A stretch of DNA of 62,548 nt, filler included, from Dugesia japonica (Eukaryota): NCBI GenBank assembly GCA_001938525.1. It is 6 parts of 6 records of this genome, joined end to end, with 100 filler letters (N's around TTAATTAATTAA, not from the genome) between each part and the next. Parts side by side here need not be neighbours in the genome. Positions count along the whole stretch, not along the records: positions 12,544 to 20,951 come from MQRL01597222.1; 5 more parts are not named here. One strand, 5' to 3'. Made by a program: the position numbers and the translations under genes. Under the pieces are notes generated by a model that ran no database searches, had not been told where the DNA came from, and saw only the letters and a program-made list of their open reading frames with translations. Of the stretch, positions 12,544 to 21,059 are shown in pieces. The first letter of the stretch is position 1. Every line of letters starts with the position of its first letter.

Positions 12544-12696
12544 ATATTCACCAAGTAAAACGGTTCAAGGGAGAGATTCGACAAACTAGTTACAAATCTG
12601 AATCTATCATCAGTGTAGTTAGAGAAAAATAAAAATAAAGACAGGTGTTACCCAATTCGAGAACGAAAAGTAAATCCTAAATACCATCAATAAATC

Positions 12697-12943
12697 TGAG
12701 AGGGGGATGTAGAAATAGATGTGGTTTAGTCGCATTAATTGTAATCGGCAGTTTTTTAAAATATATTTGGTTTTGTATAGCTACTTCTTTTTAGTTATAA
12801 AACAACATTAAGAATTTCACAATTATCCATCGTTTTTTATTAAATATAAATGTTTTTTAAAGCTGAAAAGATGCAAGAATAATCCATCATATTTAATGTT
12901 AAATTTATATTAAAAAATATCGATTTTTCAAAAAGAATACACA
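12697..12943 (+). mobile_element. Polypurine tract and start of a gypsy-type 3' LTR (family X), interrupted by the 3.27-kb element and resuming at 16215-about 16330
   Basis: GAGAGGGGGA followed by TGTAG at 12708. The sequence on both sides of the insertion aligns contiguously with the reverse complement of 46440-46690. Confidence 0.7.
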
Positions 12944-13642
12944 TGTTGGGCTAGAACATATAATTTTGGGTGCAAAAACGCCAACAAAGCATCCCCAAAT
13001 AATACGAAAATTAACAGAGAACAAGCGGAAAATTAAGTAAACAATTGGTGCTGGACCAGATATTTCGCCTTATCGTATCATTATTATTATGTAATTATTA
13101 TTATTATAATTATTATACGAGAATTATTGAAACGGGAAAAAATGAAAATTGGACGTAGAGGACCCAAATTTGGAGATACAACGATGAAATTTGAATGTAC
13201 GATAGGAAATAATAAGACAAATAATAAAAATAATATAAAATACTATAATAAAATATTAAAGAGGCCTCTACGACCCATTATTGTTATTATAATTAACGCT
13301 AATTAGCGTTTAATATTATTGAAAATTTGATTCATTCTGGTCCAGTCACGTTTATTTGTGGTTTTTCCAAGCGATGATTCAGTTGGAAAACTAAACAGTG
13401 AGACAAGGACATTCTCTTGACGACACGAATTTGGTTTTCCAAATTCGTTGTCAATCAATCGTGCATGCAGGCAAGCAAAGTTGTGGTGCGATCATTCCCG
13501 AGATTCGAGAAAATCTAACTCCAGGAACCAATGAACGGACGAGATTTTGAAATGCAAATCGACGATTGGGCGAGTAATGAGAGCTCTCCAGTCGTGGTGT
13601 AGATGAAATGAATAAAACCAGATTACTTGGAAAAAATGAACA

Positions 13643-13816
13643 GAAGAATTTAAAAATTTTTACTTGAAAACATTTTAGGAAAATTATCGAAAAATTTTAC
13701 GGCATCGAAATCATTTTGACAGGAGCAGAAGAATTTAAAGATTTCTTTTTACTTAAAAGCATTTTGGGAAAATCATTTGAAAATTTTTAAGCCATCGAAA
13801 CCATTTTTGCAGAAGC
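13643..13816 (+). repeat. Tandem duplication of a unit of about 87 bp inside element copy 1
   Basis: AGAAGAATTTAAA...CATCGAAA.CATTTT..CAG.AGC occurs twice. Confidence 0.8.
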
Positions 13817-14399
13817 CTCCAGAACATTTTATCGGCAACTACCACAGAGTAAATATTTGTTCATTTATTTATTTTATTATTTTTACATTAAAATCAATTT
13901 TTTTGTTAAACAAAATAAAATCATCATGTCCGAGTGCCGCCACCAGAATCCTTTTGATTTAAAAATAAGATGACGATTTAAGGACGAGACAAATTTCGTA
14001 ATGTGGCTTAAAAAGTATGAATTGAGAAATCACGGGAATTTAGAGGAATTCGCCGGGTGGCGTTCACGCATGGAGGGGTGCAGGTGAAGCCGAGAATTGT
14101 AGGGCGAAATTAGGTTTTGTCAGATTTCAACGAGTACAAATATCACAGTAAATTTTTCTGATTCCCCGATGGGATTATTGTTTGATTTATTATATTTTGA
14201 GTAGGAAAATCATTTTTGTGTCTTGTCAAAAGCCGTATTAATATTTAATAAATAATTTTAAAAAAAAATTATTCATTATTCTTATTGATTTATTTATTAT
14301 TATTGATCTTATGTNAATATTTTCTTTTAATCAACCGATTTGTTTTAATTATTAATATTTTTTTTTGTACAAAATAAATCGAAGTGCAAGTGTTTTCTA

Positions 14400-15047
14400 A
14401 TGAGTAGGGAATGACAAGCAGTGTTGGACGATAGCGGGAACGAGAGAAGATACCAGTTACCAGCGGATATCTTCTCTAGTTCGCATTATGAGACGTGGTA
14501 AATGATGATAGGCCGTAGGCCGAAGAAATCGTGTAAATCATGGGAGGTTCAAAAATCTAATTCTATTGTATTTTATTCATTATTGTATGTAGAGTGCATT
14601 AATAAATATGATTATAATTACTAGATGGCAAAAGGCATAAGAAATTTGAAAAGACCACGCTATATATGGTTGTACATCGACTCTAACGGTTGCTACTATA
14701 TTGAATGGTCGGAGGTCCAGACAATGATCCGTGATGAGAAGATAGCCCGGAAAGAAGAGGCAGATGATTTGAGGGCGGATCTCGAGGTAGCCAACTTGCG
14801 GGTTACCATACTCGAGGCGAATAATAAGCTACTCACGTCGCAATGGGATCGACTGATGACGACCCTCGAAGAGATTGATGTGGAAGACGTCATTGAAGAG
14901 ACCCAATTGCCTGGAGCTGCTGAAGAGAGTGATGCAACTGAGAAAAATAGCCTGGAGTCGCAAGCGGAAGAAGAAGTCTCGATTATTCAGGATTTGATGG
15001 GCCTGAGCGATTCCATCCCGAAATCTCCTGTGAATAACACTAACTAA
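14400..15047 (+). pseudogene. Element gene A, copy 1: exon 14400-14546 (two stops) plus exon 14625-15047; coiled-coil protein with acidic tail
   Basis: GAG|GTTC donor and CTAG|ATG acceptor are in phase 0. NERRYQLPADIFSSS, IGRRPKKS and GCYYIEWS have counterparts in copy 2. Confidence 0.6.
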
Positions 15048-15568
15048 AATGTGTAGCGTTGTCAAATGTGAGTTGTTTTGCTGTTTTTTTTGTTTACATT
15101 TTTAGTATGGAAAATTAAAGTGATATATGTATGTCACGATGATTGCAGAGGCAATCTTTGAATGATTTTAATATTTAATTGTTAGATAAATAGAACTTTT
15201 TCGTTAATTAAATAAACAAAAATAAGAATGAAGATGAGAAATGCANGCGCAAATTAGAGCATATTGAAACATAACGAGTTCACTGTGGTTATGATTATTG
15301 ACGAGGAGACGGGGTAACCATCGGACAATTTTTTGATCGAATCAAGAAAACATCATTGAGTCGTGATCGTGAAATAAATTTTATTTGAATAATGCTGTGG
15401 TATACAATCGACTTTTATTTTCAGTATTAGCATTAATAAGAAGCGGTTTCATAGTATAAGATTTAACGCTGTAAATAATCGAAATAATTTAATAATTTCT
15501 TGATTTATAATTCAACTGTTACTTAGTTTAATAATTAATGCTAAAATAAACTATTTTGATCATTTCAG

Positions 15569-15874
15569 TGAATCCGATAAAAGATAATAAGACTCCATCG
15601 AAAGAAATGGAAAGAGGAGCGTTGGACGCTAAGAAATGAAGTGCTGCAACTGAAAAGCCAGGCTACCAAGCATAGTAGCAAATATCAACAATTAAAAGAG
15701 AAAGAGTTGGCCTTGCAGCAAGCCAACCAATTGATGGCCGAAATTATCAAAATTTATGCAGACAGAGAGGCCGTGGTGTTCAACAATTTGAGGGCACTGT
15801 GGTTGTTGTACCGAAACCTAGTGAATGAGCCGTGTGAAGGGAATGCCGATGTGGATGTAGATGCATGTGAATAG
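15569..15874 (+). CDS. Element gene B, copy 1: short coiled-coil protein
   Basis: TTTCAG|TGAAT acceptor; KKWKEERWTLRNEVLQLK...SSKYQQLKEKELALQQANQLMAEIIKIY...LRALWL; AATAAA just after the stop; clear homologue at 26700-27012. The 5' frame is disrupted. Confidence 0.65.
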
Positions 15875-17019
15875 ATGCAAATAAATAGTTCGCAACGTGA
15901 TTGATTCTTTTTGTGTTTATTCGCGGTTATGTATGACCAGTTAAATTTTATCAAACTGGATTTATGTAAAATCAATACTGAACAATTAAGAGTGATTGAG
16001 ATGGGGTTCATGAAAAGGAAACGTAAGACATGATACCGCAAAGTCGCGCTGAACCCGTGGAAAGAGGGACATTTCACTAAGGTGACTCAAATGCTTGTGG
16101 TTTTTAGGTATGCCCCTAGACGAAATTGATCGCACTTATGTCTTTAGGAAAATAATCGAGGTCGAGGCATGCAGACATTAAACTCAAATTATTTAAAATC
16201 CTAAAAACCCAACACACATACACATTTTTTTAATAATATACATTTCAATAATCCTGCAAAATAATTTTATAAAATTATACACTTTCTCATATTTTTCAAA
16301 ATTATAAAATACTTTAAAAATTTGCAAAAAACCATGGCAAATGTTTAATAAAAAATAAATAATGCCATTTAAAATAAAACTTTATTGTTATATATTTCGA
16401 CGGATTAACCGTCAGACAAAAATGAAATAAATGAGTTTATTCAGNNNNNNNNNNNNNNNNNNNNNNNNNNNNNNNNNNNNNNNNNNNNNNNNNNNNNNNN
16501 NNNNNNNNNNNNNNNNNNNNNNNNNNNNNNNNNNNNNNNNNNNNNNNNNNNNNNNNNNNNNNNNNNNNNNNNNNNNNNNNNNNNNNNNNNNNNNNNTATT
16601 TTATTACTGTTACTTATAAAATCGAAGATGTTTTGTCAAAATATTTAAATTTTTTTAATTTTAGATTATATTAAAAATTTTAATTAAATTAAATCAAAGT
16701 CTTGAATTTTACGACGAACGTTTCTAATACGGCTGAAACTCGAAAAAGTAAATTTTACTCCATTATTCTTTTTTTTAAATTGTATTTCGTTTAGTAATAC
16801 TCCCATTAGAAAGAAATTATTTTCAGAGCTTACAATAAAATTCACTTCTGGGTTAGAAATAGAGATGATATTGTCTTTATTTTATTTTAATTCACGAGTG
16901 ATTGGAAATAAAAATAAAAAACTGTTTTGTAAATTAACAATAAATATATGATTTGTCTAAATAAATTCGATTACTCAACGACAACAGTTTTAATGAAAAC
17001 ATAAAGAAAACTAAATTAC

Positions 17020-17485
17020 TTTTTACGGGGAATCCATCATCCATTGTACTCCACTTTTTTGAAGTATTCTTCAGTAAAACCTTTTTGTTGCCACTTTCAA
17101 CTTGTTTTGTTTGAGTATTCGTATTATTTATTTGATTCAAATTCTTCAAAGAATCTGGATTTAGATTTACTAATAATAATGGTTGACTTTGAGATAATTG
17201 TTCATGTAATTTTCTTGAGGCAGGTAAATTGAGGATATGTAATGTTCCACCACTACCGTTTTCCGGTTGTGTTTTTTCAGAATCAGCACTGTCTTGAGAA
17301 TTTGCATTTCTATTAAATTTTACAGCAGCAGAATTAGAAAGACGACTGAGTTTAATTTCAATTTTTTTTGATTCTACGATATTATTGTTATTATTATTAT
17401 TATTATTACTTGTAACAGTATTGGCATTATTTGTCAACTCTACAGTTTTTTGTTCTTTTATTTCTTTAATCGTAGAACTATCATT
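17020..17485 (-). CDS. Cav3 (T-type calcium channel alpha-1) C-terminal exon, Asn-rich low complexity
   Basis: TATAG acceptor at 17486, in frame with the preceding exon across a 63-nt intron. NDSSTIKEIKEQKTVELTNNANTVTSNNNN... The donor position (17020 vs 17027) is uncertain. Confidence 0.75.
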
Positions 17486-17548
17486 CTATAAATAATATTA
17501 AGTGAATAATAAATATTTCTCTCTCTAATTTCTAATTAGAAAACTAAC

Positions 17549-17662
17549 TTCTTCAGAATCAGAGGAGATTTTCTCTCTTTGTTTCTCTTTATTTTCTTCA
17601 TCGATTTCACGCTGAACTTCTTTTTCAATTTCATCATCATCACACATCATTTTATGAGATTC
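17549..17662 (-). CDS. Cav3 exon after IV-S6
   Basis: CAG|ESHKMMCDDDEIEKEVQREIDEENKEKQREKISSDSEE|GTTAGT; continues MKHLE-ES as in Cav3 channels. Confidence 0.88.
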
Positions 17663-17899
17663 CTGAAAAATTATTATTTATTTCATTTTATTAATAGAAT
17701 TGTTTTTAGAAAACAATAAAATATTAATAATATCAGGTTTTTCAAAAAAGAAAATTCATTTTCTTTAGAAAATAAAAATTAATTTTTACCGATATTTAAG
17801 GAAAAGTCTATCAAATATATATTCGCTATTTTTATATACTACATCTTCCGAACGTCGGACTAAACTTTTGATATCTTTCCTATACCAGGTATGAATCTT

Positions 17900-18740
17900 T
17901 TTATTAAAATTTCAGGACAGGACAGATTTTATATTTGTTATAGTGTCAAAACCTTTGTGAAGATGTAATGTCTAGACAATAGGGAGAATGAGGAATTACT
18001 TAACAATGAAGGGGTTTAAATTTGGGCTGCATCACTTTTACAGTATGTGTTCTTGTCCTATTATAATGGAAAATTATTTTGTTTCTAATTGATCAAGACA
18101 AGAATTTTGACAATTAGAGCCTTTCTTAAGCGGTCAGAAATTTCAAGGTAGATCTCTAAATTTATTGTCTGACCCCTTTCTTGCCGGACACCCAATAATA
18201 CCTTGTATGGTGAAGTCCTGGCTTCGGCCCTCGTACTACAGGTAACTACTGGGTTTTTCTCATGTGGATTCTCATACATTATTTATTTATTACCTTGAGT
18301 CATAATTCATTTTAAGAATAGCGTTTATAAATATCAAATGACTAATAAATGGTGTATCTGAACTCAAATTGGCTTTTGTTCTTGGCTTAAATCACATGGA
18401 ACCCAAACACTGCTTCTATTATTTTTCCAATCTGTTTCATGTGGTTGCATACACTGCTGATACTATAGTGCAGTAGAAGAAAAAATTATTCTTGTTTGTT
18501 CCGGGTTTCTTTTAATAATGCCTCTCAACATTAGTATCCACCACAGATTTGTTATACCTTCTCGATTTGTTATCCAAACTAAGACTGCCAGTACGAACCT
18601 ATCAAATCATTTTTTGCAATTGCGAACATTGAAGAATCAACCATTAATATTGTTGATATGTTTGGGATAACAGTGAGATCTCATCAGCGTTTAAATTCAA
18701 CCAGTATGCAATAGCGAATATGATTTGTATTTGAGAAATT
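17900..18740 (-). mobile_element. Decayed mariner (DD34D) transposase inside the Cav3 intron
   Basis: Minus strand reads HIRYCILVEF, FDRF, WVPCDLSQEQK, IMTQGNK*IMYENP, KVLLGV and GQTINLEIYLEISDRLRKAL. Confidence 0.8.
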
Positions 18741-19025
18741 TTAACTCATCTGTCAACACAATTTTTGAAATTATTATATATTTTAATTTTAATTAATCTA
18801 AATAGTTCTCAACAAGATTTGATATAAAATTGATTTTTTTATTAATTAATCAAGTCCTTAACATCAAGGTATTAGACCATGCTATTAGACAATATTAAAA
18901 CAAACAAACTTTCAATATGAAAATAAATCATTTATAAATATATAATATATATAATAAAAATATATAATAGAATTAATTATAGAAAAAATAAAAATTAATA
19001 ATAATATAATAAAATTTTCTTTCAC

Positions 19026-19181
19026 CTCAAGATGTTTCATTAAAACTGCAACAACTACATTTACCAAAACGAATTGAGCCATTAACACAAAAATTACAAA
19101 GTAAATTGGTGCTATAATTGGTGATACACAACAATCTTTCTGGCATTCTTCTGATTTATTACATTTAACTCTAAGAGTATC
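19026..19181 (-). CDS. Voltage-gated T-type calcium channel alpha-1 (Cav3, CACNA1G/H/I family), domain IV pore loop end and S6
   Basis: CTAG|[52 protein letters not shown]|GTGAA. The [28 protein letters not shown] motif is diagnostic. Confidence 0.95.
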
Positions 19182-20599
19182 CTAGAAAATTTATGAAAAC
19201 ATAAAATGAAATAATTTCACTAAATATTTAGAAACATTTTTATTATTAATTAAAATAGAAAAATTAAAACAATTATAATAATTCTTTTATTAAAATTTAA
19301 ATTATTAACAAATTTGCCAGGGTAGTGTTTTAAATTAAAATTTAACTTGTAATTAATTCATTGAAATTAAATATTATACCAATATTAATAGTTCTATGAC
19401 CGAAGCGCAGCCATAAATGCCTACACATAATGCTAACTTGCTCACTGAAAAGTACAAACAAAATTTTCATACTCTTGGATTTCATTTATGATGGACTACC
19501 AAATAAAAAAAAGTGTATAAATATCATTGTTAGTATTTATCAAAATGCTAAAACTAATTGGCATGTTAGTAGAAAAAAGTGTTCTGGTTGTTCATACACT
19601 CTAAAGTATTTTTTAAAAAAGTCTCGTGTCTAACATTTGACCGGTTTTGAACTTCAGATTCAATTGAATATGAAAAACTAAATATACTAAAGCAAAAATA
19701 TGTCTTCATGAATACTATTCCACGTAAACATTTACTTGCAGGATTTTATTTATGTTGACATAAACATCTTCTTTCTCACCATTACTATCGCTATCTATAT
19801 TGCCATCGTTATCGACATTATTATCGTCGTCATACGATTCAAGAGACATTGGTTATTTTATCAATAGAAAGGCTGATCTAGATGACATCACAAAATAATT
19901 AGAGTATCCTAATTATTATCCACTTGGGCGTTTGGTGCAATGCTTTATGATTGAGTCACCTTTTTTCTATGGTAATATGCATTAGAATTATAAATCAGGA
20001 TGCATGCTGGTGTACGTGTAAAGTTATATTGAAATTTTGAAATTGTGCGCAGTTTAGAAAATCTAAAGAATTGAATAAAAATAATTAATTCAAATAAGCC
20101 ATACACGATAAGCGTGAAAGTAGAAAATAGGAAAAAAGGAGAAAAACTTGTCAAATAAAATATTACAAATTACCAAAGGATATCTGAAAGGCTAAATATA
20201 ATGAAATATTTAGATTTGTCATAAAATAAATAATAAAAATAAATAATTTAAAAATTCTGTTACAAGTAGTATCTTTTAAATAACAAGAAAAAAAGAAAAA
20301 ATAGAGAAGAAAAAAAAAGAATTTGGAAATTATCAAAGTTTGAAACAAAATTTCATCGTACTTAGTAAAGAAATGATTTTTTTTGTTTTCAATTAAAATT
20401 TTTAGGGGAATTTTCAACATTCAATAATTTGATTTTTAACATCTTTTAAGATTCCATATTATTTATAAAATAATTTATTATTAAATAGTTTCTCATGCTA
20501 AAAAGATTATTAGGTTTTATTTTATAGTTGAGTCGCGGAAAATATTTTCTTGGTTTGGTGAACCGTAATACGAAAATAGTTGCTCTATACTCTAATTGT

Positions 20600-20780
20600 A
20601 AGAGTAATTCATCGATGATAAATATCTGGGAGAATTTTCTATCATAAATAATTTGGTATATATTATATAGTTTTATATTAAAATTAATTCTTGAAATATT
20701 TTTAAAAAAATTATTTAGAATATTTTATATTAAAAAAAGTATTATATAAAACTATTTTTGAATAAAAATAACTTTCATAT
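20600..20780 (-). repeat. Fragment of dispersed AT-rich repeat (probably family X LTR)
   Basis: GAGTAATTCAT..ATGAT.AATATCT.G..AGAATTTT...ATTTGG.ATATATTATATAG is shared with 46140-46280 and 55163-55320. Confidence 0.65.
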
Positions 20781-21059
20781 TATAGTAAGAATATTTTTTG
20801 CATTGCATTTATGGATAGTATGTTTAAGTTGGTGAGTCACATGTTTTTTAATAATATCAAATTATGAACGTCAATGATGCTTGTGAGATGTGATTAATTA
20901 TAATAATGATAATTAAATATTTTATGTTATGTAATTGTATGTTTGCATGTANNNNNNNNNNNNNNNNNNNNNNNNNNNNNNNNNNNNNNNNNNNNTTAAT
21001 TAATTAANNNNNNNNNNNNNNNNNNNNNNNNNNNNNNNNNNNNNNNNNNNNTTTCAACG

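What the first reader, a model, noticed from the sequence alone, without database searches (positions are those of the whole stretch)
12944..16214. A 3-kb TG...CA mobile element with its own spliced coiled-coil genes but no transposition enzyme (two divergent copies)
Seen: two elements on different scaffolds (12944-16214 and 24278-27355) share the ends TGTTGGGCTAGAAC and AAAATCCTAAAAACCCAACA, which give only a 7-bp inverted repeat. They are collinear: structured 5' domain, variable tandem repeats, gene A, conserved motif, gene B, AATAAA, structured 3' domain. No RT, integrase, transposase, gag or Rep motif is visible. Established: TG...CA ends with a 4-bp TSD are the signature of retroviral-type integrases (Ty3/gypsy, Ginger); giant Ty3/gypsy elements (plant Ogre, planarian Burro) have multi-kb LTRs; ORFs inside LTRs are known from retroviruses (MMTV sag, HIV nef). 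Inference: this is either the solo LTR of a giant retroelement whose LTR is an accessory-gene cassette, or a non-autonomous or satellite element mobilised in trans. I do not recognise the proteins.
Basis: partly seen in the sequence, partly recalled or inferred. Interest (0 to 1): 0.9.

Follow-up and report, generated by a model that had tools for sequence, protein, structure and literature searches.

The report
Probable solo LTR carrying orphan ORFs
A 3.3-kb insertion with integrase-style ends sits beside an animal calcium-channel gene and is most simply the leftover long terminal repeat of a large retrotransposon, but with one copy and no access to the source genome this could not be proved.

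Summary
The described unit is present at 12944-16214. It has TGTTGGG...CCCAACA ends and a CACA duplication on both sides. A pair this G/C-rich arises in 3 of 1000 composition-kept shuffles. It contains a 2 x ~90-bp tandem repeat, a 140-codon ORF (A) and a 97-codon open frame (B). No RT, integrase, transposase or gag domain was found.

ORF A has real codon periodicity (P ~3e-4) and codon usage unlike the host's. B is only borderline and has no ATG near its start. Both are predicted to be long helices. Neither has a relative in 5.8 billion clustered or 1.84 billion representative proteins, in Pfam, or by fold search.

The "structured 3' domain" folds no better than shuffles, and the AATAAA is one of 16 such hexamers. 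Splicing and the second copy could not be checked.

There are no internal terminal direct repeats, so this is not a small LTR-internal-LTR element. The simplest reading is a solo LTR of a large Ty3/gypsy-type retroelement (about 0.5). An enzyme-less element moved in trans remains open (about 0.2). The organism could not be identified, and no other copy was reachable. Interest is moderate.

The parts
12940..12943 (.). Left copy of the 4-bp target-site duplication (CACA)
   Evidence: Read directly. Chance test.
12944..16214 (+). The element (3271 bp, GC 34%, G>C skew 0.19). Probably a solo LTR in sense orientation on the + strand.
   Evidence: No terminal direct repeats.
12944..12950 (+). Left terminus TGTTGGG (7-bp inverted repeat arm)
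13048..13347 (+). Long-range hairpin domain closed by a ~13-bp stem. It encloses a very AT-rich core, the only TATAAAA of the element (13234) and a 34-nt palindrome (13286-13319).
   Evidence: Fold z -2.79, with 1 of 100 shuffles as good. Palindrome. TATA.
13638..13816 (+). Tandem repeat, two units of ~90 bp, ~80% identical
   Evidence: (D1, D9)
14438..14482 (+). Palindrome/hairpin in a GC-richer island upstream of ORF A
   Evidence: Fold of 14400-14545 gives z -2.25.
14625..15047 (+). ORF A, 140 aa, ATG to stop. Predicted beta-hairpin plus long helices. An orphan.
   Evidence: Codon periodicity chi2 27.1, P ~3e-4, reached by 0 of 883 chance open frames. AF2 pLDDT 75. No relatives.
15581..15874 (+). 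Open frame B, 97 codons to the stop, with no ATG near its start. Predicted as a single long helix. Coding status uncertain.
   Evidence: Periodicity P 0.03-0.06. AF2 pLDDT 84. No relatives.
15880..15920 (+). AATAAA six bases after the stop of B, followed by a T/GT-rich stretch. A possible polyadenylation site, which would be the R/U5 border if this is an LTR.
   Evidence: Weak evidence, because the hexamer occurs 16 times on this strand.
16208..16214 (+). Right terminus CCCAACA
16215..16218 (.). Right copy of the target-site duplication (CACA)
16937..19852 (-). Neighbour, not part of the element: 3' exons of a T-type (Cav3) voltage-gated calcium channel gene. The domain IV S6 exon lies at 19026-19181. 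The element lies downstream of the last visible exon, beyond a 153-N gap.
   Evidence: PDB 6kzp/6kzo, E 6e-11.

Best explanation
The 3271-bp unit is a solo long terminal repeat of a large LTR retrotransposon of the Ty3/gypsy or Bel/Pao type. An integrase inserted the parent element into AT-rich DNA just downstream of a T-type calcium-channel gene and duplicated the 4-bp target CACA. That much can be read from the ends. Recombination between the two LTRs later removed the internal gag-pol part and left one LTR between the two CACA copies. This step is inferred.

On this reading most of the unit is a very long U3. It holds a tandem-repeat block (typical of LTR enhancer regions), hairpin-rich sequence and at least one real or recently real protein gene, ORF A. 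A possible polyadenylation site lies near 15880-15920 and a ~300-bp U5 follows. ORF A, and perhaps B, would then be accessory reading frames carried inside the LTR and read from transcripts that run through the 3' LTR. Their function is unknown. They are predicted to be long helices, which suits oligomerising or scaffold-type proteins.
For: - TG...CA ends, a 7-bp terminal inverted repeat and an exact 4-bp duplication. A pair this G/C-rich appears in 3 of 1000 shuffles.
- The duplication touches both ends, with no primer-binding or polypurine sequence between them.
- There are no terminal direct repeats inside, so it is not itself an LTR-internal-LTR element.
- No enzyme or gag domain was found in any open frame.
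- The right end coincides with a shift in composition and skew. The purine-rich strand is uniform, with G>C skew 0.19.
- There is a tandem repeat in the 5' half.
- The size is within the known LTR range: Ogre LTRs are 1.9-6.5 kb, and Burro elements have up to 25 kb of internal sequence and exceed 30 kb with LTRs (PMC6431247).
- In most genomes solo LTRs outnumber full elements (established knowledge).
Against: - No second LTR, gag-pol, PBS or PPT has been seen for this family. Only one copy was available and no relative could be reached.
- A real protein gene inside an LTR is unusual.
- The U3/R/U5 layout is a guess. AATAAA-type hexamers are common here, and the presumed U5 is not structured.
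- The left boundary has little support from composition.
Confidence: 0.5

Rival explanations
1. An independent, enzyme-less mobile element. It would be either a non-autonomous derivative of an integrase-type DNA transposon (Ginger1-like) or a satellite that borrows the integrase of a retroelement. It keeps only the few terminal bases the integrase recognises and carries its own small gene or genes.
For: - It has the same ends and duplication as above, and Ginger1 also has TG...CA ends with a 4-bp duplication (PMC6839031).
- ORF A shows a real coding signal with non-host codon usage.
- GC-richer islands are separated by very AT-rich spacers, which could be exons and introns of an own transcription unit.
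- No enzyme domain was found.
Against: - The inverted repeat is only 7 bp. From memory, and not tested here, Ginger elements have much longer terminal inverted repeats.
- No autonomous partner is known.
- Nothing here distinguishes this from a solo LTR, which is the commoner object.
- Splicing is untested.
Confidence: 0.2
2. Not a mobile element. On this reading it is a stretch of host DNA, a small host gene for a helical protein present in two diverged copies by segmental duplication, and its apparent ends and 4-bp repeat are coincidence.
For: - TG-started 7-bp inverted repeats with some 4-bp flanking repeat occur about once per piece by chance.
- The left boundary is not marked by composition.
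- ORF A behaves like an ordinary coding exon.
Against: - A pair as G/C-rich as TGTTGGG/CACA is rare by chance, 3 of 1000.
- The right end coincides with the shift in composition and skew.
- ORF A has GC3 ~53%, against ~18% in the neighbouring host exons.
I could not check this.
Confidence: 0.1
3. The unit is a solo LTR, but the reading frames are not functional genes. On this reading ORF A is a decayed fragment of captured or ancient coding sequence, and B is a chance open frame in purine-rich DNA.
For: - Open-frame lengths are within chance: shuffles reach 140 codons in 9-11% of trials and 97 codons in 64-73%.
- B has no ATG near its start and only borderline periodicity.
- There are no relatives anywhere.
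- K/E/L-rich strings are readily predicted as helices, so the models prove little.
Against: - ORF A is intact from ATG to stop and has strong codon periodicity, reached by 0 of 883 chance frames.
I could not check this.
Confidence: 0.15

Closest known systems
Multi-kb LTRs of giant Ty3/gypsy elements (plant Ogre, LTR 1.9-6.5 kb; planarian Burro/GYPSM1, over 30 kb with LTRs)
   Same: Size class, TG...CA ends with a short inverted repeat, internal tandem repeats, and an AT-rich animal host with short introns, which would fit a planarian (PMC6431247).
   Different: No sequence comparison was possible. The organism is unidentified. The accessory ORFs of Ogre and Burro are described in the internal region, not in the LTR.
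Retroviral LTR-borne reading frames (MMTV sag in U3; HIV/SIV nef overlapping U3)
   Same: A protein-coding frame lies inside a terminal repeat, upstream of the polyadenylation site. Named from established knowledge only.
   Different: No sequence or fold likeness to any viral protein was found. It is not shown that this unit is an LTR, or that the frames lie in U3.
Ginger1 DNA transposons and their non-autonomous derivatives
   Same: TG...CA termini and a 4-bp target duplication made by a gypsy-integrase-like transposase (PMC6839031).
   Different: Only a 7-bp inverted repeat is present here, with no integrase-like frame.
LARD / TRIM non-autonomous LTR elements
   Same: No enzymes, integrase-type ends, a size of a few kb.
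   Different: Those elements have two LTRs around a non-coding core. This unit has no terminal direct repeats.

Membership tests
LTR of an LTR retrotransposon (solo LTR) | 5'-TG...CA-3' termini forming a short inverted repeat | tested here: met
   TGTTGGG / CCCAACA, 7 bp
LTR of an LTR retrotransposon (solo LTR) | Target-site duplication of 4-6 bp directly abutting both ends | tested here: met
   CACA on both sides. A pair as improbable as this arises in 3 of 1000 shuffles.
LTR of an LTR retrotransposon (solo LTR) | Elsewhere in the genome, two direct copies flank gag-pol, with a PBS after the 5' LTR and a PPT before the 3' LTR | not testable with these tools
   The source genome is not in any collection. 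All protein, pattern and exact look-ups returned nothing related.
LTR of an LTR retrotransposon (solo LTR) | U3-R-U5 layout with promoter and polyadenylation signal | tested here: inconclusive
   There is one TATAAAA (13234), and an AATAAA at 15880 followed by a GT-rich stretch. However, 16 such hexamers occur on the strand, and there are no transcript data.
Burro / GYPSM1 giant gypsy elements of planarians | Sequence identity of the unit to the family's LTR, and a planarian host | not tested
   No comparator sequence was shown by any tool. The host is unidentified.
Ginger1 DNA transposon (non-autonomous derivative) | TG...CA ends with a 4-bp duplication | tested here: met
   The family feature is taken from PMC6839031.
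Ginger1 DNA transposon (non-autonomous derivative) | Terminal inverted repeats of tens of bases or more (from memory) | tested here: not met
   The ends match over 7 bases only, and similarity is lost after that.
LARD / TRIM | Two terminal direct repeats (LTRs) around an internal region | tested here: not met
   The self-comparison finds only the ~90-bp tandem repeat and two palindromes.
Autonomous transposon or retroelement of any class | A frame with an RT, integrase, transposase, Rep or gag domain | tested here: not met
   Pfam gave no hit below E 0.01 on 12 open frames from both strands.
Ribozyme- or tRNA-related small elements (retrozymes, SINEs) | A hammerhead ribozyme or a tRNA-like part | tested here: not met
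   Rfam found no family in the element. ARAGORN found none.

The most novel reading that the evidence does not exclude
The unit is more than a regulatory LTR. It would be a gene cassette placed by an integrase, carrying at least one real orphan protein gene (ORF A, perhaps also B) with codon usage foreign to the host. It would be either the LTR of a giant retroelement used as an accessory-gene carrier, so that every solo LTR leaves a gene behind, or an enzyme-less satellite that borrows a retroelement's integrase.
Probability: 0.2. Interest if true: 0.65.

Novelty: new member of a known kind. Interest (0 to 1): 0.35.

Why it matters
If this is an ordinary solo LTR, it is routine repeat annotation next to a calcium-channel gene. 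It would matter if ORF A proves to be a conserved, expressed gene carried inside an LTR or inside an enzyme-less integrase-dependent element. Protein genes inside terminal repeats are known from only a few retroviruses. A family that scatters an orphan helical-protein gene with every insertion, and leaves it behind in every solo LTR, would be a new route by which retroelements seed host genomes with genes. It would also be a useful case for studying accessory functions of giant retroelements.

Tried and rejected
**Protein searches, all empty**
- Word-seeded searches of ORF A, frame B and a host exon against the 5.8-billion-cluster protein set.
- Full HMMER search of ORF A against 1.84 billion representatives.
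- Exact look-ups of three products.
- Back-translated scans of the metagenome, viral and prokaryote genome collections.

**DNA and literature searches**
- A scan for the 20-base 3' end found nothing in viral contigs.
- The same scan found 19 metagenome loci, all of which proved unrelated by BLASTN.
- Pfam on 12 frames of the element found nothing.
- Foldseek of the ORF A model against viral and PDB libraries found nothing with E <= 0.001.
- Rfam and tRNA scans found nothing in the element.
- The bacterial promoter/terminator scan is irrelevant to an animal and was ignored.
- A literature search for the terminal strings returned only unrelated primers.
- The Schmidtea genome paper could not be read.

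**Rejected readings**
- A vs B as paralogues was rejected (E 0.32).
- I suspected a mariner-like remnant in the host intron (about 17990-18290, minus strand). Neither Pfam nor PDB sequences confirmed it.

- Planarian origin stays a guess. I built nothing on it.
- No splice model was tested. No tool predicts introns here and no relatives are available, so the exons were searched singly by reference and the joined step was left out.
- I looked by eye at one GT...AG candidate upstream of B and dropped it.

In the scripts, the two single N inside the element were replaced by A in memory so that shuffling and translation would run. Nothing of that was printed or saved. Both N lie outside ORF A and frame B, so the results are unaffected. 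It should not have been done.
Full report
**What is there**

The piece (12544-20951) is AT-rich animal DNA, with GC between 14 and 42% in 500-bp windows. On the minus strand, from 19852 down to 16937, lie exons of a T-type (Cav3) voltage-gated calcium channel. The exon at 19026-19181 matches domain IV S6 of human Cav3.1, Cav3.2 and Cav3.3 structures (E 6e-11 to 1e-8). The following exons encode an acidic stretch and an asparagine-rich tail.

The element of the finding lies downstream of the last visible exon, beyond a 153-N assembly gap that I left as it is. I could not identify the organism. A search with the C-terminal host exon found nothing, and no tool here holds eukaryote genomes. A planarian is a guess based on AT-richness, ~60-bp introns and poly-asparagine coding. 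Nothing below depends on it.

**Check of the observation: ends**

- The unit at 12944-16214 is 3271 bp. It starts TGTTGGG and ends CCCAACA, and the two ends are inverted repeats over exactly 7 bases.
- CACA stands directly outside both ends.
- A TG-started 7-bp inverted repeat with any 4-bp flanking repeat is expected about once in a piece of this size and composition (mean 1.05 in 300 shuffles). The bare pattern therefore proves little.
- Almost all such chance pairs are made of A and T. A pair as improbable under the base composition as TGTTGGG plus CACA appeared in only 3 of 1000 shuffles.
- The right end is backed by independent signals. The best three-segment GC model puts a change point at 16176, with GC 0.35 inside and 0.19 outside. 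The G>C skew is 0.19 inside and vanishes to the right.
- The left end is only weakly marked by composition, because a very AT-rich block lies just inside it.

**Check of the observation: content**

- There are two ~90-bp tandem units, ~80% identical, at 13638-13816.
- Self-comparison shows no other long repeat. There are no terminal direct repeats, so the unit is not itself an LTR-internal-LTR element.
- Nothing else in the piece resembles the unit.
- The 5' half contains a long-range hairpin at 13048-13347 (z -2.79). Several local segments also fold somewhat better than shuffles (z -2.2 to -2.3). Two palindromes lie at 13286-13319 and 14438-14482.
Neither does the stretch between the two frames (z +1.09).
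- The AATAAA at 15880 lies six bases after the stop of frame B and is followed by a T/GT-rich stretch, which looks like a polyadenylation site. However, AATAAA or ATTAAA occurs 16 times on this strand, so the hexamer alone carries little weight.

**Are the genes real?**

- The longest open frames are 140 codons (A, 14625-15047, ATG to stop) and 97 codons (B, 15581-15874, with no ATG near its start), both on the + strand. Several open frames of 90-110 codons run antisense to them.
- Length alone does not make them genes. The + strand is T-poor, so dinucleotide shuffles of the element reach 140 codons in 9-11% of trials and 97 codons in 64-73%.
- Codon-position composition is a better test. ORF A gives chi2 27.1. 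Only 0.03% of shuffles of its own sequence reach that, and none of 883 chance open frames of at least 90 codons from shuffled elements do.
- Frame B gives chi2 13.4, which is borderline (P 0.03-0.06).
- ORF A has about 53% G+C at third positions, against about 18% in the neighbouring host exons. Its codon usage is therefore not the host's.
- My conclusion is that A is, or recently was, a real coding sequence, while B is unproven. Whether B's lack of a start codon reflects splicing or decay cannot be told from one copy.
- No splice model was tested. No tool predicts introns here and no relatives are available. I searched the frames singly by reference and left the joined step out.
- The element does show GC-richer islands separated by very AT-rich spacers of 47-187 bp (GC 6-21%). 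This is compatible with exons and introns but is not evidence for them.

**What the proteins are**

- Single-sequence AlphaFold models give ORF A a short beta-hairpin (residues 14-27), a 56-residue helix (28-83, pLDDT above 90) and a second helix (mean pLDDT 75).
- Frame B is modelled as one 80-residue helix (pLDDT 84).
- This fits 'coiled-coil-like', but K/E/L-rich strings are easily modelled as helices.
- A and B are not similar to each other.
- Pfam finds nothing. The word-seeded search of 5.8 billion clusters finds nothing for A or B.
- A full HMMER pass of A over 1.84 billion representatives finds nothing with E <= 0.001.
- Foldseek against viral models and the PDB finds nothing with E <= 0.001.
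- Ten further open frames on both strands carry no RT, integrase, transposase, Rep or gag domain.
- Rfam and tRNA scans find nothing in the element.
- So 'no enzyme' and 'unrecognisable proteins' are confirmed as far as these libraries reach.

**Related copies**

I could reach none.
- Exact look-ups of three products were not on record.
- Scans of the viral, metagenome and prokaryote genome collections, with back-translated peptides of A and B and with the 20-base 3' end, gave no relative.
- The 19 metagenome loci holding the 20-mer are chance matches with no further similarity.

**How it most likely works**

The ends show that an enzyme of the retroviral integrase kind made this insertion. 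These enzymes leave TG...CA and a 4-6 bp duplication (established knowledge; TSD lengths and Ginger ends are also in PMC6839031).

A 3.3-kb unit with such ends, no enzymes, no internal LTRs and the duplication touching both ends is most simply a solo LTR. A large LTR retroelement inserted here, and LTR-LTR recombination later removed its interior. LTRs of this size are known: Ogre LTRs are 1.9-6.5 kb, and Burro elements total over 30 kb around an internal part of up to 25 kb (PMC6431247). Tandem repeats in the upstream part are common in LTRs.

On this reading most of the unit is U3. ORF A, and perhaps B, would be LTR-borne accessory frames read from transcripts that run into the 3' LTR. The site near 15880-15920 would be the polyadenylation site, and the last ~300 bp would be U5. 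Everything after 'solo LTR' is inference. I put this reading at about 0.5.

The rivals are:
- an independent enzyme-less element moved in trans, either a Ginger1-type derivative or a satellite of a retroelement (0.2);
- a solo LTR whose frames are not functional genes (0.15), which is a variant of the main reading;
- host DNA with coincidental ends (0.1).

**Comparison with the known**

The unit works like a retroelement LTR and meets the testable membership features: ends, a short inverted repeat and the duplication. The defining feature, paired copies around gag-pol with PBS and PPT, could not be tested.

- It fails the LARD/TRIM definition because it has no terminal direct repeats.
- It fails the usual Ginger layout because the inverted repeat is only 7 bp. 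The Ginger TIR lengths are from memory.
- Likeness to the LTR-borne genes of retroviruses (MMTV sag, HIV nef, named from knowledge only) is positional at most. No named viral protein came back from any search.

**Verdict**

The object is most likely a new member of a known kind, a large solo LTR, with one unusual feature worth a look: an intact orphan ORF with real coding signal and non-host codon usage. Interest is 0.35. It would rise to about 0.65 if the gene-cassette or satellite reading were shown.

**Limits and declarations**

- I did not fetch any full-length giant LTR element as a comparator (referred).
- The N positions were left untouched in all tool calls. The exception is that in the scripts the two single N inside the element were replaced by A in memory for shuffling. 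Nothing was printed or saved. Both N lie outside A and B, so the results are unaffected. I declare it as a slip.
- I also looked by eye at one GT...AG candidate upstream of B and dropped it.

Noticed in passing
window 16937-19852 (- strand): 3' exons of a T-type (Cav3) calcium channel gene. The IVS6 exon at 19026-19181 matches human Cav3 structures. There are short introns of ~60 bp, and the tail exon holds a run of nine asparagines coded by (AAT)n at 17380-17408. The gene may continue beyond the visible exons, so the element could lie in its 3' UTR or in an intron.
   Followed up: partly
window ~17790-18700: A GC-richer block (~33% against ~20% around it) inside a host intron, with short broken open frames on the minus strand. 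By eye they recalled a mariner/Tc1 transposase remnant. Pfam and PDB sequence searches did not confirm this.
   Followed up: partly
window 14625-15044 versus host exons: Third-position G+C of ORF A is about 53%, against about 18% in the neighbouring host exons. The element's coding sequence has not drifted to the host's extreme AT codon bias.
   Followed up: partly
window 13421-13455, 13286-13319, 14438-14482: Three near-perfect local hairpins or palindromes (stems of 9-13 bp) lie in the 5' half of the element. They have no Rfam match and their role is unknown.
   Followed up: no
window 14182-14365, 14570-14618, 15170-15225, 15374-15560: Very AT-rich spacers (GC 12-21%) lie between GC-richer islands of the element. 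They look like introns, but no transcript data or relatives were available to test this.
   Followed up: no
window 16445-16597; single N at 14315 and 15247: A 153-N assembly gap lies between the element's right flank and the host gene, and two single ambiguous bases lie inside the element. All were left as they are.
   Followed up: no
L012:1714-1760: A metagenome contig holding the 20-base 3' end also aligns over 52 bases at 79% identity, running across the element's end into the flank. It also matches (ATT)n runs. I judged this low-complexity chance similarity, not a relative.
   Followed up: partly
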